A stretch of DNA of 64,000 nt from the NCBI RefSeq assembly GCF_032191835.1, contig NC_083237.1:25234001-25298000 (forward strand), given 5' to 3'. Each line of letters begins with the position of its first letter. The stretch's first letter is position 1. A program made the translations under genes and the position numbers. This DNA is from Heteronotia binoei. Its lineage: Eukaryota. Shown here in pieces: positions 5,651-57,849 of this stretch. The notes under the pieces are model-generated. The model was not told the origin of the DNA. It ran no database searches and saw only the letters and a program-made list of their open reading frames with translations.

Positions 5651-6449
5651 TCTTTTTAGGAAAAAAAAAGCATACAGACTATAGACTTCTCTATGAATAA
5701 AAAACCAGACGCTGCAACCCAGTCTGCGCGCCCCTTTCTGTCTCTGGGATTCTTTTGCAGTTACAAATTAATTCAGCATAATAACAAGGGGGTAAAAAAA
5801 ATCACCTTTTTGCATCTCACACTCTTGCAGTCGTGGATGATCAATGCCACAAACAAATCACGCGTGAGTGTACGCACGCATACACACATACACGAGAAAG
5901 AATCGGGGGGAGGGGCTCACCCATTCTTCCCCTGCAAACCCAGCCCCCTTTGAAATCGCAACCCCAGCCTAGGTTTCCCATTCCCGCCGCCCCCCGCCGC
6001 ATGAAAGACACAGGTCAACACTGTAAAAATCACCCCCCCACACACACACACACCAAGGGTCAGCCATGCATTGATCACAGCATCTTCCATATCATCAATA
6101 TCATTTTTTTTTGGGGGGGGGGGGGGAGAGCTTCACTTCCCAAAGGAGTCTCCCCCCCTTCTGTTTTTTTAAAGCCGGGATCCTGGGAGAAGCCCCCTCC
6201 CCTTATTCAAGCAGCAATCCCCGCCTGATCTCCTGCACAACAAAACCAGACCGACCTTCGGCTTTGAAGGGGGGGGGGGGGGAACGGTTTCAAAAAGAGG
6301 AGCGGGTCTTACCTATTCATGACAACTCCCGAGGAAAGAATAACCCAGGATCGGAAGGACAGCAAATTTTTTCTCCGCGTCTGGAAAGAGATAATTTTTT
6401 TCCTCCTTGATTTTTTTTTGGGGTGTGTGTGTGAAAAAAAATGTATTCC

Positions 6450-17935: not shown

Positions 17936-18963
17936 GGAGCAAGGCCTTTTCTTGCACTTGAGAAGCAGAGAAAAGATCAAGAATCAGTGAGCCCCAAGAG
18001 GCTGCGCAAAACTTAGTGGCTGACCCTTATTCAGAACTTTAGGGCTGCCAAAGTCAGAAGGGGAAATTCCTGGAGACTTGGGGGTGGAGCCTGGAGAGGG
18101 TGGGGTTTGGAGAGAGACCTCAGTGGTATAGTTGCCAGCCTACAAGTGAGGAGAACCTATTCTGTCTATACAAAGAATGAGCTAGAGCCTTATGAGAAAA
18201 TGACATGAGTTGTGGGTTCCATCTGAAGCAACGATCAAGGCAATGAAACTTTTTTACATCAGGCAACATGGACCAGCTTTGTATGAATGAACTGATTCTT
18301 TTTGCTTACATATTAATGAAACACTAGAGACTGATTTGAGAAATCTATCTGATGTGAGGATTATGTGTTATTTTTGGTGTGGAACCCTTAAGAAGTGCCT
18401 GCGTGCACAGAAATAATCTTCTGCAGACTGCTTGAATGTTTATTCTGTTAATGAGTTGCTTTCAGACTTCTTTGAACTTCCATTAAATGTTTGTGAATGA
18501 GTTCTCTGAAGACTGTTTTGGAATGTCAATGGCACCTGAGAGTGTATATGTTTTATCGGTCCTGGCAGTGGGCTCTTAGGCATGAACTGTGAAAGTTACA
18601 GATTTTACAAACATACAGAGTAGTTTTCATTACCTGATAATATTTTTCTCATAATAAATATTTTGTTTGAGCAGCATGTGTTTGACAGTTTAACCCAGAC
18701 TTTTTTTTGTTAGAACTTAACCTTCAAGTGAGGCCTGGAGATCTGATGGAACAACAAATGATCTCTAGGTTACATAAATCAGCTCCTATGGAGCAAATGA
18801 CTACTTTGGAGGGTGGGTTATATGGTACTATTCCCCTCTCTCTCCATACTTCACCCCCAAATCTCTAGGAATTTCCCAAGCTGGAGTAGGCAACCCTACA
18901 CAGAAACCACCTCCCAAAGCAGCCATCTTCTCAGGGGAGCTGATCTCTGTTGTCTGGAAATCA

Positions 18964-42912: not shown

Positions 42913-44960
42913 GTTTTAATTAGCCGAGATCAAGAGACCCATTTATGCCAATGCAAAGCAATTAGTTTTATGCTGCCAGTTTAACAGGAATGGATTATTA
43001 AGACCACTAGAAGTTCACCTCCAAAGTTAAAATATTGTGTTCTCTTCTACTGTGCCAGTGCAGCTTATGTAAGTTTTTTAGTGTTACTATTGTACTAATC
43101 TGAATGATTCTTATGGCACAGAAAACCTGAACAATTTTGTAGTGAGCACCAAAAAAGGGGGCTCCAGTCGCAGCAATATAACTGCTTCTAGAACAAATCA
43201 AACAAGCTCTACTTCTAATAAAAGCTCTTGCTTTCATGGATAAACTGACTGCCTTCAGGAATCAGAAAGGCAATCACTCCCTAAAACAAACAATGCTGCA
43301 CAGTTGGCAGGTGTATTAAAAAGAGGTTTTTGCCTTTTTAGCTGATGAACAATAAGGAATAGAGGAAAACTGCCAGATTGCATCAGATTGTCTTATCCTT
43401 CAGGCAGCCAAATATCCTGTCTCCAATATGGCCAGTGCCAGATGTTTCAGAGGCAAGAACTTCATGATAAACAGGTGCAGGATAATCTTTTCTCTGCTAA
43501 TCCATAATTGTTAGAGATTTGGCTTTAAACCCAGAGACACAAGACTGTATTGCTCTTCCTAAGAAATCCATTATTCCACCTCTGGGTCAAACTGCTAAAT
43601 TTTTGACCTCCATTTCTCCCTGGGTTTCATATTTGCATGGTAAAAAGCATTTATGACATGCTATAAATATGCCATTTTTATGCTTTAGTTAATTCACTTC
43701 ATTCTTGAATTCTGAGAGGAGGAAACTGCACTAGCTGTGTTCTACCACAGAAGGAAATAAAGGACAAGATTAATGTGCTAGTCAGCATGAGATCTGGTTA
43801 GAGGACTAAAAGAATCATCAGCCTACTTTAGAAAAGCATAGATTCAGGAACAGATGTGCTCCTGGACAAAATTAGGAAGGCAAAGATATAGGAATGGATG
43901 GGCAAAAAAAGAGAGACAGGTATTAGGGTGGAAGTATAGTGGACATTATCAGGATGGGCAGGGATCCTGGAAGAGATTGCACATTGTTCAAAGAGCTTAA
44001 AATGAACAAACCTTTTGCTGAAATATTGTGAGAAGGCTATCAAGCAGAAAATCTACTCAATAGGCCAAGTTAAACTATTCTGGAAAAGGTAGGAAGAGCC
44101 TTGATAGGCAGTACAGAAAGCCAGATTTGCCTCAGCGGTATAAATTTTGCCAGAATAAACAAAAAGGTAAAGGTAGTGCTTGCAGAATAGACCTATGTAA
44201 ATACTGATGCCAGGGCCTAAGAAACGCTTCACACAGGTATATACCAGATATATACGCTGCACTGCTTGAAACACTCTTTTGCTGTGATCATGCTTCTCAA
44301 ATAAACCCTGACAGCAAGGAGTGAGACAGCATGTGGAAATGACAGTCTTCTGTGTGGAACAAGTATTTCCTCATTGTTTCCTTGTCTGTCTTCAGGTGTT
44401 GTCATGTCTTTTGTGAGCCCTGAAGCTCAACAGCTGTCTCAAGAGATGAGACAACAGGCAGAGGAACAACAAGACAATACATTACTCAGTCTGTATAAAA
44501 GGCAGTGTTCCACCAGCAGCATCAGGTCAACTACAGGTAAAAGATCTTTTAAGGAGAACATAAAACAAAGCAATGCAGTAGCTTTGCACCAATTTATAGG
44601 CTGTAGCTCTGCTATTTAAAAAAGAGGCCAGTATTCTTCTCTGTAGTTTGGTGTTTTGGCGGGATTGTTGTCAATACCTTGAATACCCCTTCCTGTCAAA
44701 TGGTAAAAAGCTGCAATGGGAATGATAACAGAGCAATTAATGATAAGTTGTTGAAGAAACTTAGGTTTAGTAGATACAAGGAGAGGTTGTGTGGAAGGCA
44801 AAAAAAAGTTAAATGGAAATTGCCTTAGTGATAGGTTTTGGGGGCAAAAAAGCTAGATTTGTCACAGAAGACCCTGCAGTTGTATTAGGCCATTATCACC
44901 AGTAACTGCATATTCTAAAATTGTCACTCAATTAATTTGTGGGAAAGGAAGACTACTTAC

Positions 44961-45198
44961 TGGAGAAGGTCACGTCCAATACAAGAATGGCATATTTGAA
45001 CTTGTGATTAGTCATAGTAGAGTCGAAGATATCAAAACCCAAAAACAGAAAGCTCTGGAAGAAACAGAGTGCACCCACTGTAATGCCATAGCAGCATGCT
45101 GCTTCATTTTCATTCAGCACACAGTGTAGTTCTGAGGAGGTTGCCAGGTTTTGGTACCCTTCATTCACCAAGGAGGCAAATACAGTCAAAGAGAAAAC
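44961..45198 (-). CDS. SYNGR4: SYNGR4 coding exon 2 (238 bp)
   Basis: ctctttcag|GTTTTC...TTCTCCA|gtaagt; VFSLTVFASLVNEGYQN...HCVLNENEAACCYGITVG...LDVTFS (synaptogyrin MARVEL domain). Confidence 0.95.
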
Positions 45199-45539
45199 CT
45201 GAAAGAGGAGAGAAACAGGGCAATTCAGCATGAATGTTGCCAGCATATCATATGAGCCTTCTCAAGTGTTACCTATGTGTTTTCACAATTAATCCATCAT
45301 ATATTTGTAACCACTCCAAGAACTGAAATGCATAAAGCAGGCACAAAGTTGATGGGCAGGAAGTCAGATATGTACTCCTTCATCTTCCATGTTGCCTTAG
45401 TGAAAGTCTCTGGTTCTCTGCAGATTTGGACACATTTGTGACATCTGTATAAATCCCTTCCTTCAAATTAAGCCACTGAACCTAAGATTTTAGTAGGCAT
45501 TAGCTCAATGGTGCCCAACAAATCAGTCAGTATCATAAT

Positions 45540-46083: not shown

Positions 46084-46489
46084 TGTTAGGGAAATTCTGT
46101 TTGAAATTCTATTTCTTTATCTCAAACAGTGCGATGAATCACTTGATCAAATAATCATTGAGAGGCATTTAACATGAAAAAGCAAAAACATATTTATTTC
46201 TACAGGAAAAGGGTACTGAGAGATGACAATAACAAACACTAAAGAACTACATCCTCACACTAGAAGATCATGTGCTTAATGGAGGCTACTTCCTCCTGCT
46301 TCTTGACCTCTGTGCCTGAACAAAGGACAAAACAAAGGTTTTCCCACTTCTAGACCTTGATTGACAGCAGTCAGTATCTTCTTCCTAGGTCATGCAGACA
46401 ATAGGCAATCAGGCACAGTGTTAACCCTATAATGACTGGAACTTTAGAACATTGCAAAGGACATACAGAACAGATATATATTTCCAACA
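46084..46489 (-). repeat. Copia 3' LTR (406 bp), preceded on the minus strand by polypurine tract GAAAAGGGG
   Basis: Direct repeat of 51904-52503; the PPT is the complement of cccctttt c at 46490-46498. Confidence 0.93.
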
Positions 46490-46536
46490 CCCCTTTTCAA
46501 TGTCTAATATCAAAGTCATTATACATTCAATAGTCA

Positions 46537-47900
46537 TTACTCAGTATTCACTGTAACATTCACATCAACTAGATTCATAATTTCACATAAACGATCAAAT
46601 CTAGCACAAGGCAATGACTTTGTAAGTATATCAGCTACCATAGCTTCTGTATAACAATATTCTATCTTAATCAGCCTCTTCTGGTGTAGATCCTTCACTA
46701 GCTCACATTTAATACCAATAGATCTACTTCCGGCTGTTCTAATTTCCCCTTTACATATAGCAATACACGCTTGGTTATTTTCAAACATTACAGGTTCTTT
46801 TATCTTGAAGTCTTTCAGCAGATGAAAAATCCATTCAAGTTCACTGCAGGCACTGGCTGCTGACACACACTCAGTTTCTGCTGTAGATTGTGCCACTATA
46901 GTCTGTTTTCTGCTAGTCCGTTCTACAAGTCCATTTCCGTAGAAGAACAAGTATCCACTGGTCGATCTGTAATTGCACGATTCTTCTGCATAGTTGGCAT
47001 CCATGTATCCAACTAGTCTGGGATTCTCAAAAGGTTCAGTGATCAGCCTTAAGTCCATAGTCCCTTTTAAGTATCTGGCAAGCTTCTTTACTGCATTCCA
47101 ATCATGGTGATTAGGCGAACTTACTTTTCTGCTCAGTATTCTGACAGCGGCTGTAATATCAGGTCTGGTAGTTTTACTCAGGTACAGGAGTTTTCCTATA
47201 GCTTCTCTGTACTCTCCAATGTCTTTGAGTGGTTGACCACCCTGAGCTCTCAGATATGCAGGTTCAAGAGGTATTTTAGATTCTTTACAGTATCTCATGC
47301 CAAGAGATTCTATAACGTCCATAATCTTTTGTCTTTGGCACAGTTGAAAGAGTCTGTCCTTGAGTCTCTCAATCTGTATTCCTAGGTAGTGTTTAATATC
47401 TCCAAGTCTTTTGACTTCAACCTCTTTGTTCAGCATTTCAACAATGTCCTTAATGCCCTCTTTGTTCTTGCAGCTCACAACCAAATTGTCAATGTAAACC
47501 AGAATGTACTGATATTCTCCATCTTTAAGCCTAGTGTCTAGGGTTCAGCTTTCCCTTGCTCAAATCCTTGTTGCTGTAGTAGTCCAGTTATTTTGTCATA
47601 CCAGCTTTTTGCAGCTTGTTTTAAACCATACAGTCCTTTGTGGAGTTTGAAAACACAGTTCTCTTTGCCAGGCACTTGAAAACCTTCAGGTATTTCCATA
47701 TAGATTTCTTCTGATAACTCACCATTAAGAAATGCTATCTTAATGTCTAGGTGCTCTATGAGCATATTTCTAGATGATGCCACACTCAGTAGTGTTTTAA
47801 GTGTAGCACTATTGATAACTGGTGCAAAAGTCTCTGAATAATCAATTCCAAATTCTTGTGCATAGCCTTTGGCTACTAGCCTTGCTTTGTACGTCTATAG
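46537..47900 (-). pseudogene. Copia RT/RNase H remnant
   Basis: HLDIKIAFLNG, KLHKGLYGLKQAAKSW, YLGIQI, TRPDI, YMDANYA, STAETE and MVADILTK motifs; fragmented. Confidence 0.9.
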
Positions 47901-48166
47901 TTCCATCATCTTTGTACTTTATTTTGTAAACCCATTTGCATCCAATAGGCTTTCTTCCTGCAGGTAGCTTTGTAAGAGTCCATACATCTTTTTCATAAAT
48001 GAACAGTATCTCTTGTTCCATTGCTTGAATCCATTTCTCCTATTCTTCATTAGGTAAATCACACACTTGTTTCCAGTTCTTGGGTTCCTCTTTAGGTTTC
48101 ACAGTCTCTATAAATATCACAGTATCCATGTTTCTGTGGTGGTTGCTCTTTTGTGCTTCTTTCTGA

Positions 48167-49311
48167 TCATCTAAAAATGAGTGGAGGTTCTGTCGCTCCC
48201 TGCAGTACGATCCCCATTTCCCCTTCTGGTTCAGTACAGTCTTCAGAAGGTAGACCTGCCGGTTCACCGGTGGTCACTACAGGTAACCAGGTACACCAAT
48301 CTTCAGAAACATCATCATTAACCTCAGGATCAGATTCAGGTACACAGGGTGCTCTAGGCAAATTACTGTCATCCACAAACACAACATTACAATGTTTGGT
48401 CTTATTCAGCTTTGGATCATAGACTCCGTAGCCTTTTCCCACTGAGGGATATCCTACTATGAATCCAATCTCAGTCCTTGCATCAAGCTTCCCTCTATTT
48501 TCTCTAGGAACATATGCATAGGCTTTTGCTCCAAAAGTTTTGATACGCTTAAGTCCTGGCTTCCTGCCAAACCAAGGCTGGAACGGAGTAATTCCTGTTA
48601 CTTTTGAAGGTATTCTATTGTGGATATACACTGCTGTATTTACAGCTTCAGCCCACAGGCCTTTAGGTAATCCAGAATGCATGAGCATTGCTCTGGTCAT
48701 TTCCTGTAACACACGATTAAGTCTTTCCGCACTCCCATTCTGCTGTGGAGTGTATCGGACAGTCACTTTGTGTTCAATCCCTTCTGCTTTCAGAAATTTC
48801 TTGAACTCACTGTTGCAATATTCACCACCTCCATCTGTCAGCAAGCTTTGAGGTGCACGCCCAAATCTGCTTTTAACCATGGCAACATATTCTTTAAATT
48901 TTTCAAGAGTCTCATCTTTTGATTTGAGCATATAGACAGTGCTATATTTTGTCTTTGCCTCTGTGAATACTGAGAAAAATTTATTTCTCCCAATCAAAGC
49001 TTTTATAGGCCCAATAACATCACAGAATATTGTCTCAAAAAACCTTTCATTATGCACACTGCTTTTTCCACTGAAGCAAGGTGCAGTTCCTTTTGCTCTA
49101 GACAAACATCACATCTTTCCTTGGATTTATCACAATGCACAACATCAAGGCCACAATCCTTTAGCAACTTCTCAACATTCTGCATGCTTCTGTGTGCTAA
49201 CTTTACATGCCAAATATAAACACATCTCCTATGGTCACACTTTTTGCATTCAGTCTGGCAAACAGTCTTTTCCACAACATCAACAGCATCTGACCTTTCA
49301 CTTAAGTCCAT
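48167..49311 (-). pseudogene. Copia GAG-pre-integrase/integrase remnant
   Basis: WHVKLAH...CDVC (HHCC zinc finger), CDVIGP, TDGGGEY, PQQNGSAERLNR and GKLDAR motifs. Confidence 0.9.
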
Positions 49312-49391
49312 AATATAATGAGCTCCATTTCTTTCATCCAGTTTAAAACTAATTCCAGAATTCTTCTGAATAATTTCACCTTCATCAAGAT

Positions 49392-50207
49392 TAGGGTTCC
49401 CAACCCTCCCGCCCTGGCGGGGGACCCCAGGATTTCCAGCCTCTTCCCCCAGCCTCGGCCGCCCCTCGGGGCTCCCTCCCTCCCTCGCAAGCTCAGGCCG
49501 GCCAGCTCACTCTTGCTCTGTCCCTTTGCAGCTGCAAGGACGCCGATGGCACGGAGCTGTGCAGTGAGATCCACTTCTATGCCCGCGTGAATTCCAAGGT
49601 GAGCCGCTCAGCCCCGGCGTGTCCGCGCTTGACCTGGTCGCTCTGAAGCTGCAGCAGCGCCGCAAAGCTGGAGGCTGGGGAGGATCTCCCCCGTGCGCAG
49701 CGCTGCAGATAGGGTTGCCAATCCCCAGGTGGGGGCAGGGGATCCCCCGGTTTGGAGGCCCTCCCCCTGCTTCAGGGTCGTCAGAAAGTGGTGGGAGAGG
49801 GAAATGTCTGCTGGGAACTCTATTATTCCCTATGGAGATTTATTCCCATAGAAAATCATGGAGAATTGATCCGCGGGTATCTGGGGCTCTGGGGGGGGGC
49901 TGTTTTTTGGGGTAGAGGCGCCAAATTTTCAATATAGCATCTAGTGCCTCTCCTCAAAATATCCCCCAAGTTTCAAAAAGATTGGACCAATTCTATGAGC
50001 CCCAAAAGAAGGTGCCCCTAGCCTTCATTATTTCCTATGGAAGGAAGGAATTGAAAAGGTGTGCTGTCCCTTTAAATGTGATGGCCAGAACTCCCTTCGG
50101 AGTTCAGTTATGCTTGTCACACCCTTGCTCCTGGCTCCACCCCTAATGTCTCCTGGCTCCTCCCCCAAAGTCCCCAGATATTTCTTGAATTGAACTTGGC
50201 AACCCTA
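49392..50207. mobile_element. Compound hAT-type non-autonomous element (two left ends, one right end) carrying captured host DNA
   Basis: Outer left TIR TAGGGTTCCCAA (49392), inner left TIR TAGGGTTGCCAA (49710), right TIR TTGGCAACCCTA (ends 50207). Perfect TSD ATCAAGAT (49384-49391 and 50208-50215) only around the outer ends. Confidence 0.9.
49532..49598 (+). pseudogene. PTGES3L: Captured 67-bp exon resembling PTGES3L (p23-like), with its splice sites
   Basis: tctgtccctttgcag|C TGC AAG...TCC AAG|gtgagc translates to CKDADGTELCSEIHFYARVNSK versus recalled human PTGES3L [22 protein letters not shown] (16/22 identical). Confidence 0.85.
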
Positions 50208-51475
50208 ATCAAGATATACAGCATAATTATTTCTTAGAAGCACTTGGCTTGAAAGTAAATTCTCAATTGATTCAGGTGCATAAGCTACATATTTCAATCT
50301 TCCTGGCATTAAATCTCCATCAGTGGTAAGGAATTTCATTTTGATCTCACCCACACCACAAACTTGTAAGGGTTTCTGGTTGGCACCTGTAATTTCAGGT
50401 CTCTGACTTTCATCGAACTCTGAAAACATGCCTTTATATCGACAAATATGCATAGCAGATTCACTATCAATCAAAAATCTTCCTCTTTCACCAATAAAAT
50501 TCACATTATTAACATGCATGGAACTTTCTCTGTTTTTTTTCTTTGTTCCCACCTGGGCCATGCGGCTTGGAAAAATTTCTGGCTGCTATTATTTCTATGG
50601 CCACGAGATGGCGCCCGTGTTCCCTCATTTGAAACATGTGCTTTAACATTACTATTCCTTTGCTCAGTAGCAGCATCACAGTTATTACAATATCTTGCGA
50701 TATGGCCTTTTTGCCCACATCTATGGCATATTATATCTCTTCTTGACTTATTCCTATACTGTGGTTTCAGGCTTAAAGCAGACATAGAGTCAGTTTCAAG
50801 CTTAAAGCAGACATATAATCAGTTCAGTGTCCTTGTCCCCAGATCTGGAAGCTGCTTCCTCCTTGATAGCATTTAACAGGCCATCCAGACTCAAAGCCTT
50901 TTGCAGTCCTAAAATCATCTTAATTGGCTTGTAAATACTGGGTAGAGCTTTCAATATAGTTGAGATTAAGTCTCTTTCTGCAATAGCCTCACCAAGCTCC
51001 TGTAGTCTGGATTACATGCACATAAATTCCTTCAGATGTTTAGTCACATTCTCCCCTTCTTGCACTTGAAAACCAACATTTTGCCCTTTAAATCATGAAT
51101 AGTGCTTGTGGGAGTTTTGTTATATTTAAGGCATTCAAGCATTTGTTTTGCAGTTTTAAGAGTATGCAATTCCTTAATAGATTCTAAAATGAGAGTTTTT
51201 GCAAAACCATCTAGCCGTTTAAAATCTGATTTTTCTTGCTCATTCTAAGGGGGATTTTCAGACAAAACTTGCTCAGCTTCATAAATCTCAAGTCTTTGCG
51301 TTAGGAGCGAGAGCCAGAATGAGAAATTATTCTTAGTTAACTTCAGGGTACTAAATCCTATCATAGGTAGGTTACTCACAATTCCAAAACCAAGATTTGC
51401 AGTGGCTGCTCCTGAAAATGTGGAAACACAAAATCCAGTTGCTCCTCTCTCTGGGCTCGACATTTTGCACAGCAA
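50205..51475 (-). pseudogene. Copia gag/protease remnant
   Basis: KLTKNNFSFW (gag N-terminus), CHRCGQKGHIARYC zinc knuckle, FLIDSESAMHIC (protease with DSG mutated). Confidence 0.85.
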
Positions 51476-51879
51476 TCAGGCAGGACAGGGTTAAAGATTC
51501 TTCCTTCCACACTGGAGAGAAAAGGCAGCTGAATGTGCGCGCATGGTTGCAGCAAGGCTCTTCCAAGGTCTCTGACGTAATCCACAGAAAAAGGGTTAAA
51601 AAGCACCAAAAATTCTCTTTCTAGCACATCTGAGACTTTTAGACAAAAGCAGCAGCGTTTCCAGATCGAGACAATCTGAATTCAACGCTCATTTAAGTCA
51701 GAACGCTCTCAGTAATGGCAAGAGAAAAAAAGACGTCGTTTTAAAATTGAGGCTTCTGCACAGCATAGCAGCTTTTTGCCTATTGGTTTCTAACAGCTCT
51801 CAAAGGTGATCCAGATTTTAAAAAATCATTTAGATTTCAAAAAACAGTCCATGCTATAAGCTACCAGCTTGATGGCAGG

Positions 51880-51899
51880 AACCATCTGCTCTGCTATCA
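51880..51899 (-). other. Primer-binding site complementary to the initiator tRNA-Met 3' end
   Basis: Minus strand TGATAGCAGAGCAGATGGTT versus the tRNA-iMet complement TGGTAGCAGAGGATGGTT (one mismatch, 2-nt insertion), 4 nt inside the 5' LTR end. Confidence 0.75.
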
Positions 51900-51903
51900 A
51901 TTT

Positions 51904-52503
51904 TGTTAGGGAAATTCTGTTTGAAAGTTATTTCTTTATCTCAAACAGTGTGATGAATCAATGGATCAAATAATCATTGAGAGGAATTTAACATGAAAAA
52001 GCAAAAACATATTTATTACGACAGGGAAAGGGTACTGGGAGATGGAAATAATAAGGAACTACATCCTCACACTAGAAGATCATGTGCTTAATGGAGGCTA
52101 CTTTCTCCTTCTTCTTGACCTCTCTGCCTGAACAAAGGAAGTCACCTGACTAACTGACCAAACAGACAAAGCAGAAGGTCCCAGGTCCCTGGCATCTCCA
52201 AAAAAGGGTCCAGGCAAATAGGTGTGAAAAACCTCAGCTTGAGACCCTGGAGAGCCGCTGCCAGTCTGGGAAGACAATACTGACTTTGATGGACCAAGGG
52301 TCTGATTCAGTATAAGGCAGCTTCATATGTTCATATGTTCATGTTCAACAGATTTTCCCACTTCTAGACCCTGATTGACAGCAGTCAGTATCTTCTTCCT
52401 AGGTCATGCAGACAATAGGGAATCAGGCACAGTGTTAACCCTATAATGACTGAAACTTTAGAATATTGCAAAGGACATACAGAACAGATATATATTTCCA
52501 ACA
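51904..52503 (-). repeat. Copia 5' LTR (600 bp including a SINE insertion at about 52140-52346)
   Basis: About 19 substitutions plus a few indels versus the other LTR by manual count (roughly 5 percent). Confidence 0.93.
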
Positions 52504-53629
52504 TTAGCCACAGCATATTATTGGAACTGTCTGGGGCAGTGATGCTCTGTATTCTTGGTGCTTGAGCGGGGGGGGGCAAAGTGGAAGGGCTTCTAGCCCC
52601 ACTTGTGATCCTCCTGATGGCACTTGGGGGTTTTTTGGCCACTGTGTAACACAGAGTGTTGGACTGGATGGGCCATTGGCCTGATCCAACACGGCTTCTC
52701 TTATGTTCTTAATATGGAACAGCATGGTGGACACCACAAAACGGCTCTCGCAAAATATCAGGAAGTAAGGTAATGCATAACTCTAATAGTAAATCTTCAC
52801 ATTTCAAACAAATGCTCTCTTACCAGGTTACCTTTTAAACCTAATATATTGCTTGAAATATTTTCTTGCAGACATACAGCATACCTTCAGTGACACTGTG
52901 GACATCCTTCTGCTGTGATGGCAGTTGCTGCCAAAGCACATTTTTAAAAAATCCCATGGATGCCGCTTTGGGAACCCCTGTATTTTTAATTAAATTCTTA
53001 CAATTCTTACTATACTGTCTAGTTTCTAAACAGAAAGTTACGTTTTAAATACCAAAGTAGTAACACAAACAGAATAAGCCTCACATGCAAATTACATAGA
53101 ACAGATGCACAGCTAGAAATTTGTATCCAAGTGTTGATAACCTACAGTTACATGGGAGTGGGGCAAGGATGTGCACATCAACTCCAGGAAATCTATTCAT
53201 GCACTCATGTTCTTTATAGGATTGAAACTGTCAAGAAGTCCAAGCCTGAACTCCTTGGTTTCCCAAGGCTGATGTACACAAATAGCCAAACTTTTTTTAA
53301 AAATCATAATTTTTATTTAATATCTTTCAGAACAAAATTTTTAATCTGCGGACAACACAACACTCTAAAATCATACAGCAAGAAAAACTAGCTTAACTAA
53401 CGCATTTCTAAGACCTGTATTAGATGGCACAAACCTTAAGTTCAGTAGCCAAAGGCCATAGCTTATGTCGGTTGCACTATGACTATATCACACTTCAGGG
53501 CAGGCCTTTTAGTCCATCAGAACCCAGGCTAGCCTCCTTTCTCCAGACTCTTAGTTCAATTATAGTTTACTTGGCAAAGCAGCATCAGGTGATGATGACA
53601 TCCAATCAGAACATGTTCTTGCTGGAGCC

Positions 53630-55163: not shown

Positions 55164-57849
55164 TCTGTAGCTCCCTTTTGTCTCTAGAACAAACCTTGAT
55201 CTTGACAGATGCTGTAAAAGGAAGTTGGGAAAAATAAACTAAGAAAATAGAAGAATGCGATACTACTTTTATGAGATATGGGTACGGTCATATTAGTCAA
55301 CATTTGCTAGTATATTAAGGCTATTTCCCCAAATTTATAATAAGCTACTGTTTAGCAATACCCACCAATTTAGTGTTCTGTTTTTATCCTATACTAAATC
55401 CAAGGAGCTCAGAATGGCATAGATAGTTCTCCCCATTTCCAATTTACCCTCACACAGAGACATAAACTCCCAGATATTTTGAAACCATGGGGATGGGAAA
55501 AACACGAAATAAACTCGGGGGGGGGGGGGATTTGGGGTAGAATTAAAATATATGCAGTGCTTTAACAACATAAAATGCATCGTAGCAAGCAAAAAGAAAG
55601 GGTGTTACTTGGGCAAAAGCCTTCATAGACAGTCACAAATGCAGTAACAGCATATTTGGATTTTGAGTTAAACTTTGTAACATTGAAAACATTACATTGT
55701 TCTATTATCACATGTTATAACATACTGATTGTGGATAAAACTGGTCATATTTAAACAATATCCCTGAAAATGCTATAATTGCCTCCAGGAAGGCAAGGCA
55801 GCAAGCAATCTATCAATGTCTTGTGTCAATCCTTTGATGAAGTGTTGCAAAGATTGATCACAGAGGGTCAGGTGAAGAAGACAGCAGATAAAGTGTACCA
55901 ACTTCAACTTTCTCCTCTAATCTAAGATCATAAGTATTAGACTAGAGGAAGTCAAGCAGCAATTCCAAATAAGGCTTTGTCTGCTGTACCCAGAAAGATG
56001 ACGATGCCTTCTTCGTGAGCACAGAAATGCACCTTGGATTTAAGTGTTGTATATATCTACAGTATACAAAGAAATTATTTTCTAATATTTACATTAGACT
56101 CTCCATTCCATACACTGTGAGTAAAACCTTGTCTTGAAAAGCATTTAACTTATCCCAAAAGATAATATATCTCATAGTTTTGTTTTTTTTAGTACTTCCC
56201 AAAATGTCACCAGAAAGTATGTTTTTAATCTGAATTTTTCTGGGCTTTAATATCTCTGCTCACAACAACCCTGAGGTACATTAGGTTCACATTTCTCTCA
56301 ATTCTACTCATATACTGAAAGAAGTCAATAAAACTTGGTTTAGAGTGTCAATTCAGATTATATATTTGTTTGCTAAATTTAAATCCTGTTTTGAAGTTCA
56401 TATTATCTGACAATTCCTATATTATCTGACAATTCCGCTTGTACAAAGCTTGTGCAAAGCTTAATTTAATAGCCAGTCATATTGGTTAGGCAACATTAAT
56501 TCAATAATAAATTACGGTATTTTGAAGAAGCCTGTGCAGAAGAAAAGCTAATAGATTTATTTTCCTGAAACTGCATTGGTCTTAGTGCATTTATTACAGA
56601 TCTTGAGAACTACCCTGTCTGGGTGGCTAAAAAACAACAAAGATCTAGAAACATTTGTTAATCTTCCTGAGATAAGGCTATGCATTTGGCACTTTCAACG
56701 GTCACATATTTACTTCAGAATTTAAAGACATGGAAATACCCATTTATTAATGTTATGAGCAGAGTTCTAAATCAAGGTTCAGAAATACTTAAACATTTTA
56801 GGGTGGAGCCTGGGAAAGTGGGGTTTAGTGAAGGGAAACCTTGATAGGGTATAGCATCCAGTTGTAATTGTAGGGGATCAAGCCCCCACCATGAGGTTGG
56901 CAATCCTAGTTATGGATTTTAAGAACATTCACTTGGGGGAGAAGACTTGGTAAACATAAAATGACAGTATTTGGGACAGCACCTCATGCTGTGGGGAAGC
57001 CCTAATATCTGAAGTAGTGTTGTTCAATTGGTGCTCAAATTTGTTGTATGTGAATTCCCTGTGATTCTCAGTAAGCAAAATTATGAGTAGTGTGCTGCAT
57101 TCCTTTACTCTGTTGTGACAGCCTGTCCTGTTCTGAAAAACCAAAGGAGGTAATTGTGCTTTGTATTGTTACTGACCCTGAAGTGCACTGACAGACTAGC
57201 AACTAATGCGAACAACATTTTAACAAAGGCCAAAAAGAAAAAAAGCAGTGATCTGACAGGGCCAAATGCCAGGAAACAGGAGTGTTTTCTATCCGGACTG
57301 GATGTAGTACCATGGCTAAAGAAAATAAAAAATGAACTGTGACCCAGAAGATCTCCAGTTCAAATGTTCTAACCTCAGTAGGTAGTCTTAGACAATTGGC
57401 TCACTCTTTCTTGGCCTCAATAATAAGGGGTGGAGAAATAACAATACTGGTATGTTTTATAGCTATTAAGTAAGTACAAGAGAGTGTGCATGAGCACTGA
57501 AAGGGTTAATGTATCTCCACACCTCAAAACTACTTCATCACTACTATGATAAGTCTTGACAAATGTTTTCTCTATTTCTCACTAGACTGGTATGCCAACA
57601 TTTATGCCTTCTCTCTTCATTGCGAGGCGGACTACACTAGTATTTCATCAGAGATTTTTGGCAGACTACGCTAGTATCCCATCAAGATTTCTGGTACTAG
57701 AAATAGTTCCAGGAAGCTAGCGATGTTCGTATGCAGTACAAATGCAAGATTCGAGATCAACAGCACCTTTCTTGGTACCAGAAAGTTGACCTTTTGAGCC
57801 TGACTTCCCAGTTACTGATACAGGTGAAGGCACAAAGTTCTATAGGACC

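What the first reader, a model, noticed from the sequence alone, without database searches (positions are those of the whole stretch)
49392..50207. Pack-type hAT transposon carrying a captured host exon (PTGES3L-like) with intact splice sites
Between an outer left TIR (49392) and an inner left TIR (49710) lie about 260 bp of GC/CpG-rich non-repeat DNA. It contains a 67-bp exon with polypyrimidine-AG and GTGAG flanks that encodes CKDADGTELCSEIHFYARVNSK, close to the recalled PTGES3L CS/p23-domain exon. Retained intron flanks mean DNA-level capture rather than retroposition. The perfect ATCAAGAT TSD surrounds only the outer ends, so the unit of two left ends plus one right end moved as one piece. 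A plausible model is compound transposition from MITE ends flanking this exon at the donor locus. Gene-fragment-carrying DNA transposons are well known in plants (Pack-MULEs and related) but little described in vertebrates. With a very abundant MITE family this could be a general exon-shuffling route in this lineage. The exon is antisense to SYNGR4 and to the copia.
Basis: partly seen in the sequence, partly recalled or inferred. Interest (0 to 1): 0.9.

Follow-up and report, generated by a model that had tools for sequence, protein, structure and literature searches.

The report
Gecko hAT transposon carrying PTGES3L exon
An 816-bp cut-and-paste transposon shell in a gecko genome does carry a copy of one exon, plus parts of both neighbouring introns, of the co-chaperone-like gene PTGES3L; this kind of gene-fragment capture is already documented in animals, and this copy looks silent and decaying.

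Summary
An 816-bp unit (49392-50207) has a perfect 8-bp duplication, ATCAAGAT, on both sides. Removing it restores one continuous reading frame of the copia retrotransposon it interrupts.

The unit has three parts:
- a diverged, truncated hAT-MITE left end of about 61 nt;
- 257 nt of GC- and CpG-rich host DNA;
- a complete 498-bp MITE.

The host DNA is the end of PTGES3L intron 2, the 67-nt exon 3 with both splice sites, and the start of intron 3. The Heteronotia binoei PTGES3L locus aligns across exon and introns (83.5% of aligned columns). Gekko and Phrynosoma align on the exon only.

The right inner junction is flush with the MITE terminus. The left one lies inside the fractured end, at a short microhomology. 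So the piece moved as a macrotransposon-like composite of fractured end, host DNA and intact element.

I found no sign of use. All seven RNA reads and one contig across the exon carry another allele. The exon is antisense to the host gene and is 67 nt long, so including it would shift the frame. It also has a substitution at an otherwise invariant residue.

Pack-TIR elements, mostly hAT, are already catalogued in animals, and this scan noted many in this genome. This is a new member of a known kind. The donor in the same genome and the copy number remain untested.

The parts
49384..49391 (.). Left copy of the 8-bp target site duplication, ATCAAGAT
   Evidence: Identical to 50208-50215. It fits the hAT target pattern nTnnnnAn, which I state from general knowledge of hAT elements.
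49392..49452 (+). Outer, fractured left end: about 61 nt of a diverged hAT-MITE left end, with TIR TAGGGTTCCCAA at 49392-49403
   Evidence: It aligns in forward orientation with the left end of the inner MITE and of the H. binoei MITE over about 65 nt. The score is 21.5-23 against a shuffle mean of 8.4, sd 1.4, maximum 14.5. The ungapped match beyond the TIR is 29/54, reached by 6 of 20000 shuffles. It shows no such match to the right end.
49453..49531 (+). Copy of the 3' end of PTGES3L intron 2, with polypyrimidine tract and AG acceptor
   Evidence: It aligns with H. binoei PTGES3L locus L001 at about 2882-2948. The junction with the outer left end, at 49452-49457, lies in a short stretch that resembles both partners (GCCTCGG versus MITE GCTTCAGG and intron GTCTTGG).
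49532..49598 (+). Copy of PTGES3L coding exon 3 (67 nt; CKDADGTELCSEIHFYARVNSK)
   Evidence: It shares 18/22 residues with Anolis, Hemicordylus and Heteronotia PTGES3L. Its boundaries coincide with the exon boundaries in L001 (2949-3015). At the nucleotide level it is 85% identical to H. binoei and about 80% to Gekko kuhli and Phrynosoma.
49599..49709 (+). Copy of the 5' part of PTGES3L intron 3, starting with the GTGAG donor
   Evidence: It aligns with L001 3016-3139, and the homology stops at 49708/49709, directly at the inner TIR.
49710..50207 (+). Complete 498-bp hAT-type MITE (TIRs at 49710-49721 and 50196-50207, 12/12 complementary)
   Evidence: It is 93.7% identical over aligned columns to an independent copy in H. 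binoei PTGES3L intron 2. RNA-read depth runs to hundreds or thousands against 1-3 on the flanks, which shows an abundant family.
50208..50215 (.). Right copy of the target site duplication, ATCAAGAT
46110..52503 (-). Context: the old Ty1/copia-type LTR retrotransposon that received the insertion, hit at the end of its Pol_BBD (protease-region) domain
   Evidence: Pfam finds RVT_2, rve, SH3_retrovirus, Pol_BBD and zf-CCHC on minus-strand ORFs. The LTRs at 46110-46489 and 51929-52503 are about 91-97% alike, and a SINE sits in the 5' LTR.

Best explanation
This is a non-autonomous hAT composite element, a Pack-TIR with a macrotransposon-like build. It consists of a fractured, diverged MITE left end (about 61 nt), 257 nt of the host gene PTGES3L (end of intron 2, all of exon 3, start of intron 3), and a complete 498-bp MITE.

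What is shown:
- The whole 816 bp went into a copia element as one piece, using the outer left TIR and the MITE's right TIR, and made an 8-bp duplication.
- The cargo is genomic PTGES3L DNA, not a retrocopy.
- The right cargo junction is flush with the inner MITE's terminus.
- The left cargo junction lies inside a MITE left end, at a microhomology.

What is inferred:
- A MITE had inserted by ordinary transposition just downstream of exon 3. This happened either in the PTGES3L gene itself or in an earlier copy of this fragment.
- A fractured left end became joined upstream of the exon, by microhomology-mediated repair, template switching or deletion.
- A hAT transposase supplied in trans then paired the fractured left end with the intact right end and moved everything between them.

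The cargo now looks like a silent, decaying passenger, not a working exon.
For: - The TSD is perfect, and removing the unit restores the copia frame.
- The cargo aligns with the H. binoei PTGES3L locus through exon and both intron flanks: 193 of 231 aligned columns, with 3 indels. The homology ends exactly at the inner TIR.
- More distant squamates (Gekko kuhli, Phrynosoma) align on the exon only.
- The peptide hits PTGES3L alone among 1.84 billion representatives, apart from three repetitive proteins matched in many short stretches.
- The outer end is a true left end over about 65 nt.
- The interior is low-copy. RNA depth is 3-4 reads at the exon against hundreds to thousands on the MITE.
- An independent MITE of the same family, with its own 8-bp TSD GGGGGGCT, sits in intron 2 of the H. 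binoei gene, 29 nt from where the captured stretch begins. So this GC-rich part of the gene is a real target for the family.
- For decay: the copy has S where all 121 PTGES3L proteins compared have N ('NEI'), plus T and C at two other conserved positions.
- For silence: 7 of 7 RNA reads and one contig over 49560 carry C, not this copy's T.
Against: - I could not examine the donor locus in the same genome. The assembly is not searchable with these tools, and no DNA run holds the stretch. So the two-step origin and the age of the capture are inferred.
- The nearest available parent, from H. binoei, differs by 16.5% in aligned columns. If the window is from that same species, the capture is old and the composite must have stayed mobile for some time. 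If the window is from a relative, the difference is mostly divergence between species.
- In the H. binoei locus the neighbouring MITE lies in the opposite orientation and on the other side of the exon. That arrangement cannot itself be the direct precursor.
- The inner junctions are not confirmed by reads.
Confidence: 0.85

Rival explanations
1. Gap filling on the spot, without transposition (the common route for single-copy Pack-TIRs in Tan et al. 2021). In this view a plain MITE already sat in the copia, broke internally, and the gap was filled by copying PTGES3L DNA.
For: Tan et al. find that most single-copy animal Pack-TIRs arise this way. The left cargo junction lies inside a TE end at a microhomology, as template switching would give.
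Against: The two left ends are only about 70% alike, whereas a break in a single element would leave parts of one element. The right-hand part is a complete MITE starting at its very first TIR base, flush against the cargo. The TSD flanks the outer left end and the complete MITE's right end. So the whole unit, with two left ends of different ancestry, must have been inserted together.
Confidence: 0.07
2. This is one member of an older, multicopy Pack-hAT family. The exon was captured long ago, the composite has been copied around the genome since, and this is just one late insertion. In that sense the interior is 'ordinary repeat consensus', though of host origin.
For: If the window is H. binoei, cargo and parent differ by 16.5%. 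Transversions are 3.9%, similar to MITE-MITE pairs at 3.2% and to the copia LTR pair at up to about 5% (with a little non-LTR flank in that alignment). The cargo carries replacements at conserved residues. The RNA reads over the exon differ from this copy.
Against: RNA and contig depth over the interior is 100-1000 times lower than over the MITE, so any such family is small. The cargo keeps more CpG (21) than the H. binoei parent stretch (13), which is unexpected for long-methylated transposon DNA. Copy number could not be measured.
Confidence: 0.2
3. An assembly chimera, or a chance resemblance to PTGES3L.
For: No DNA reads were available to confirm the inner junctions.
Against: The outer junctions carry a perfect 8-bp TSD, and the copia frame closes exactly. 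Homology to a real PTGES3L locus runs for 257 nt through two introns and ends at the TIR base. The tblastn E-value is 6e-9 within the window.
Confidence: 0.02

Closest known systems
Animal Pack-TIRs, especially Pack-hAT (Tan et al. 2021, Nat Commun, PMC8277862)
   Same: A TIR DNA transposon whose interior holds a short duplicated piece of a host gene, copied as DNA. The hAT superfamily carries most animal cases (208 of 370). Multicopy cases tend to capture GC-rich DNA, and the cargo is fragmentary.
   Different: Most catalogued cases are single elements filled in place. This one has two left ends of different ancestry plus one right end, and it clearly transposed as a unit after it was built. 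The parent copy was found only in a related or identical gecko's assembly, not shown in the same genome as that paper's criteria require.
Ac/fAc macrotransposons and composite insertions of maize (Huang & Dooner 2008; Wang et al. 2022; Sharma & Peterson 2022, PMC9910405)
   Same: These are also hAT elements. A fractured end and an intact element lie close together, and the transposase pairs the outermost compatible ends. It moves both ends and the host DNA between them, making one 8-bp TSD.
   Different: The maize cases are 10-28 kb, were observed as they happened, and have the donor known. This one is 0.8 kb, built from MITEs in a vertebrate, and is known only from its end product.
Pack-MULEs of plants
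   Same: Non-autonomous DNA transposons carrying GC-rich gene fragments, often from the 5' parts of genes with exon-intron structure kept (general knowledge; discussed in PMC8277862).
   Different: They belong to a different superfamily (Mutator, 9-bp TSD, long TIRs). They occur in thousands of copies and are often transcribed.
hobo-type hAT elements of Anolis with filler DNA (Novick et al. 2011, PMC3014272)
   Same: Lizard hAT elements with TAG... TIRs and 8-bp TSDs that incorporate extraneous DNA.
   Different: The filler described there is mostly other transposons, not a host exon with splice sites.

Membership tests
hAT superfamily, non-autonomous element (MITE) | 8-bp target site duplication | tested here: met
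   ATCAAGAT lies on both sides. The independent copy in L001 has the TSD GGGGGGCT.
hAT superfamily, non-autonomous element (MITE) | Short terminal inverted repeats (about 10-25 bp), of the Ac/hobo type starting (T/C)AG | tested here: met
   TAGGGTTGCCAA / TTGGCAACCCTA are 12/12 complementary, and the outer end matches at 11/12.
hAT superfamily, non-autonomous element (MITE) | Mobilised by a hAT (DDE, BED/hATC) transposase that recognises these ends | not testable with these tools
   The element holds no transposase ORF. An unchecked note of this scan (s1-333749) mentions a hAT transposase fossil as a possible parent of a local MITE family.
Pack-TIR (sense of Tan et al. 2021) | The interior between the TIRs derives from a non-TE host sequence | tested here: met
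   The 257 nt align to PTGES3L intron 2, exon 3 and intron 3 of H. binoei. The interior is low-copy in RNA reads.
Pack-TIR (sense of Tan et al. 2021) | The parental copy is identified unambiguously in the same genome | not testable with these tools
   The assembly cannot be searched, and the runs do not hold the stretch. The parent is seen only in the H. binoei assembly, which may or may not be the window's own genome.
Macrotransposon / composite hAT element | Ends from two separate elements, host DNA between them, and one TSD around the outermost ends only | tested here: met
   The outer left end is about 70% like the inner left end, so it has separate ancestry. The inner MITE has no TSD of its own, and the outer TSD is perfect.
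Macrotransposon / composite hAT element | A donor locus with the two elements in place around the host DNA | not tested
In H. binoei one MITE lies next to the exon, but on the other side and inverted.
Functional PTGES3L / p23 (CS-domain) gene | A complete CS-domain coding sequence under constraint | tested here: not met
   Only one exon, 22 codons of about 150-170, is present in the window. It has S at the invariant N of 'NEI' and other replacements. No read carries this allele.

The most novel reading that the evidence does not exclude
This element may be one product of an unusually productive capture system in this gecko lineage. In that system abundant hAT MITEs land preferentially in CpG-rich 5' parts of genes. 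Fractured and intact ends then mobilise the DNA between them as mini-macrotransposons. The resulting rate would be far above the roughly 3.7 Pack-TIRs per genome reported for animals. This scan's unchecked notes already list more than ten Pack-hAT or composite candidates in about 560 windows of this genome. The H. binoei PTGES3L gene carries an independent MITE 29 nt from the captured stretch.
Probability: 0.3. Interest if true: 0.6.

Novelty: new member of a known kind. Interest (0 to 1): 0.35.

Why it matters
This is a clean, verifiable vertebrate example of a DNA transposon that copied an internal exon with both splice sites and then moved it. Its build, a fractured end plus an intact MITE, links animal Pack-TIRs to the macrotransposon mechanism worked out for maize Ac.

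On its own it changes little. The class is known, the exon cannot be spliced in frame into a host gene, it lies antisense to the host gene, and it shows no expression.

Its value lies in a genome-wide count. If many such composites exist in this gecko, the lineage would be a good system for asking how often hAT MITEs duplicate promoters and exons in vertebrates.

Tried and rejected
- Pfam and PDB searches with the 22-aa peptide gave nothing useful. The peptide is too short. Whole PTGES3L proteins also stay below Pfam's CS threshold.
- The search for homologous proteins with the 83-aa open stretch found nothing, because the length filter excludes full PTGES3L.
- Sequencing-run searches found no run holding the stretch. 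The 306-nt interior reached a share of 0.07 and the 10-kb stretch at most 0.18. So assembly junctions, copy number and the parent locus in the same genome could not be checked with DNA reads.
- RNA reads showed no listed splice joint at 49532 or 49598 and no read with this copy's allele. Most rows of that output were not shown, so absence is weakly supported.
- The copia integrase search, meant to identify the species, gave only distant hits of 56% or less.
- I considered and rejected colinearity of the outer end with the H. binoei MITE terminus, TSD and spacer on the plus strand. The score was 10, no better than the shuffle mean of 9.
- Look-ups of isoform-X2 proteins of Hemicordylus and Paroedura found no gene on record.
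- I did not finish rebuilding the SYNGR4-like protein to test whether the window is H. binoei. Only one MARVEL exon could be located.
- Rfam found nothing meaningful in the element.

Full report
**The observation**

- TAGGGTTCCCAA starts at 49392 and TAGGGTTGCCAA at 49710. Its perfect complement TTGGCAACCCTA ends at 50207.
- ATCAAGAT occurs immediately outside both outer ends, at 49384-49391 and 50208-50215.
- The inner MITE has no duplication of its own.
- Removing 49392-50215 joins the flanks into one open minus-strand frame...SSQVLLRNNYAVYLDEGEIIQKNSGISFKLDERNG....
- That frame belongs to a Ty1/copia-type element, with RVT_2, rve, SH3_retrovirus, Pol_BBD and zf-CCHC domains. Its LTRs lie at 46110-46489 and 51929-52503 and are about 91-97% alike.

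So the 816 bp is one insertion event, not an assembly seam. ATCAAGAT fits the usual hAT target pattern nTnnnnAn, which I state from general knowledge.

**What the interior is**

The 67-nt piece 49532-49598 lies between ...ctttgcag and gtgagc... and translates to CKDADGTELCSEIHFYARVNSK.

Pfam and PDB searches with 22 residues were blank. A word-indexed search failed on its length filter.

An exhaustive phmmer of a 36-aa window translation against 1.84 billion representative proteins gave six hits.
- Three were 161-192-aa proteins matched once each over the same stretch (E 8e-5 to 8e-4).
- The other three were long repetitive proteins matched in many short pieces.
- The three short proteins are PTGES3L of Pseudonaja, Anolis sagrei and A. 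carolinensis.

Compared with the 121 proteins then held, nearly all of them PTGES3L, the peptide shares at most 18/22 residues, with Anolis, Hemicordylus and Heteronotia. It has S where every one of them has N in 'NEI'. Alternative isoforms in that set break exactly at S|CK and at NSK|, so the exon boundaries match.

**Proof of DNA-level capture**

I fetched three PTGES3L gene loci: Heteronotia binoei (L001), Gekko kuhli (L003) and Phrynosoma platyrhinos (L004).
- Window 49454-49684 and 49686-49708 align with L001 2886-3090 and 3116-3138.
- A global alignment of 49453-49709 with L001 2882-3139 gives 193 matches, 38 mismatches (29 transitions, 9 transversions) and three indels.
- It covers the last ~79 nt of intron 2, exon 3 (L001 2949-3015) and the first ~110 nt of intron 3.
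- Homology ends at ...GCGCTGCAG, one base before the inner TIR.
- Gekko and Phrynosoma align only on the exon plus a few bases, at about 80%.

The cargo is therefore genomic PTGES3L DNA from a Heteronotia-like gecko, and a retrocopy is excluded. tblastn finds no other PTGES3L exon in the window.

**The two ends**

The outer end is more than a TIR-like 11-mer.
- It aligns in forward orientation with the left end of the inner MITE and of the L001 MITE over about 65 nt. The local score is 21.5-23, against a shuffle mean of 8.4, sd 1.4 and maximum 14.5.
- Ungapped, it matches 29 of 54 positions beyond the TIR, a level reached by 6 of 20000 shuffles.
- It is only about 70% like the inner left end, so it comes from a different, older or rarer element.
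- RNA depth over it is about 2% of that over the MITE.

Its junction with the intron, at 49452-49457, lies in a stretch that resembles both partners (GCCTCGG; MITE GCTTCAGG; intron GTCTTGG). That is the signature of microhomology-mediated joining or template switching, not of integration. The right cargo junction, in contrast, is flush with the first base of a complete MITE, as transposase integration leaves it.

**Mechanism**

Shown: a fractured left end, 257 nt of PTGES3L and a whole MITE were inserted together, with one 8-bp TSD.

Inferred:
- A MITE had integrated downstream of exon 3, either in the gene or in an earlier copy of the fragment.
- A fractured left end was joined upstream by a repair event.
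- A trans-acting hAT transposase paired the outermost compatible ends.

This is the logic of the Ac/fAc macrotransposons of maize (PMC9910405). It also fits the transposition-dependent route to Pack-TIRs discussed by Tan et al. (PMC8277862).

Filling in place is unlikely. The two left ends are too different to be parts of one element, and the right part is a complete MITE.

The target preference is plausible. In H. binoei an independent MITE of this family lies in intron 2, 29 nt from the start of the captured stretch.
- It occupies L001 2357-2852, has the TSD GGGGGGCT, and is 93.7% identical to the window's MITE.
- It fills about 497 of the ~615 nt of that intron.
- It is inverted and on the other side of the exon, so that arrangement is not the direct precursor.

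**Age and donor**

This part is unresolved.

L001 shares several repeat families with the window at 87-98% identity, whereas the Gekko and Phrynosoma loci share none. Earlier notes of this scan call the genome a gecko's. The window is therefore from Heteronotia or a close relative.

If it is H. binoei itself, parent and copy differ by 16.5%.
- Transitions are 12.6%, inflated by CpG. Transversions are 3.9%.
- That transversion figure is comparable with MITE-MITE pairs at 3.2% and the copia LTR pair at up to about 5% (with a little non-LTR flank in that alignment).
- Capture, MITE burst and copia insertion would then all be of similar, considerable age.

If it is a relative, most of the difference is divergence between species.

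The evidence pulls both ways.
- The copy keeps more CpG (21, o/e 0.73) than the H. binoei stretch (13, o/e 0.47), which argues against very long residence as methylated repeat DNA.
- The replacements at conserved residues argue for relaxed constraint.

**Expression**

I laid three RNA-seq runs (raw reads) and one RNA contig set on 46800-52700. All carry the species label that best holds the window's repeats.
- Depth is 1-3 on the copia and hundreds to thousands on the MITE.
- Only 3-4 reads per run cover the centre of the exon.
- All 7 reads and the one contig covering 49560 carry C, not this copy's T, and each has at least 4 further differences. They come from the parent gene or from another copy.
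- No joint at the exon borders was among the listed rows, but most rows were not shown.

The exon lies antisense to the host gene, which has a MARVEL-domain exon at 44956-45246 on the minus strand. It is 67 nt long, entering in phase 2 and leaving in phase 0, so splicing it into a single intron would shift the frame. Nothing supports a function.

**Comparison and novelty**

Gene-fragment capture by TIR transposons in animals is documented. Tan et al. report 370 Pack-TIRs in 100 genomes, 81 of them vertebrates, with 208 on hAT elements and multicopy cases in frog and alligator. Lizard hAT elements that take up foreign DNA are also known (PMC3014272).

This scan's own notes list many Pack-hAT or composite candidates in the same genome, and several were followed up as known-class Pack-TIRs. 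I did not check those notes here.

This element is a well-resolved new member of that class. Its distinctive point is the macrotransposon-like build and a complete internal exon with both splice sites. The more interesting question, whether this gecko lineage makes such composites unusually often, needs a genome-wide count.

Noticed in passing
window 49386 | 50208 (RNA contig, run X4, record 5): A 708-nt contig from a copia copy 96-98% like this one bridges the insertion site without the 816-bp element. It carries 9 more letters than the simple empty site (ATC + 6 letters + ATCAAGAT, 17 nt where 8 are expected). This could be a hAT excision footprint (doubled TSD plus 1 nt) or a 3-codon variant among copia copies. 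The letters were not shown.
   Followed up: partly
L001 2357-2852 (H. binoei PTGES3L intron 2): An independent copy of the same MITE family, with its own 8-bp TSD GGGGGGCT, makes up about 497 of the ~615 nt of intron 2. It lies 29 nt from where the captured stretch begins and is inverted relative to the gene.
   Followed up: yes
window 52140-52349: An insertion of about 200 bp interrupts the copia 5' LTR, shown by the LTR spacing jump from 5812 to 6014. RNA depth is very high, and a loose end reads GGTGGCTCAGTGGTAGAGCATCTGCTTGGG, a tRNA-like SINE head.
   Followed up: partly
window 52528-52711; L001 8320-8652 and 9379-9525: A tandem unit of about 56-67 nt just beyond the copia LTR. RNA reads show many 'goes back 49-58' joints, meaning copy-number variants among family members. 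The unit recurs in the H. binoei PTGES3L locus at 95-98.5% identity. It may be the VNTR-carrying element mentioned in other notes of this scan.
   Followed up: no
window 49778-50150: RNA reads and one contig join 49778 to 50119 or 50150, skipping 340-371 nt, with TACAGCCTTG as filler in some. This is a shorter internal-deletion subfamily of the same MITE. About 29% of family reads also carry 9 extra letters (CCAGGGGGT) after 49986, and the H. binoei copy carries a similar extra stretch there.
   Followed up: no
window 18040-18898: An 859-bp unit with related ends (TAGGGCTGCCAA ... TAGGCAACCCTA) and an AT-rich interior unlike a MITE. Its flanks show only a degenerate possible duplication (TCAGAACT / ACAGAAAC). 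It may be another cargo-carrying hAT relative.
   Followed up: no
window 56780-56908: A lone right end of a related hAT MITE family (TTGGCAATCCTA) with no matching left end nearby.
   Followed up: no
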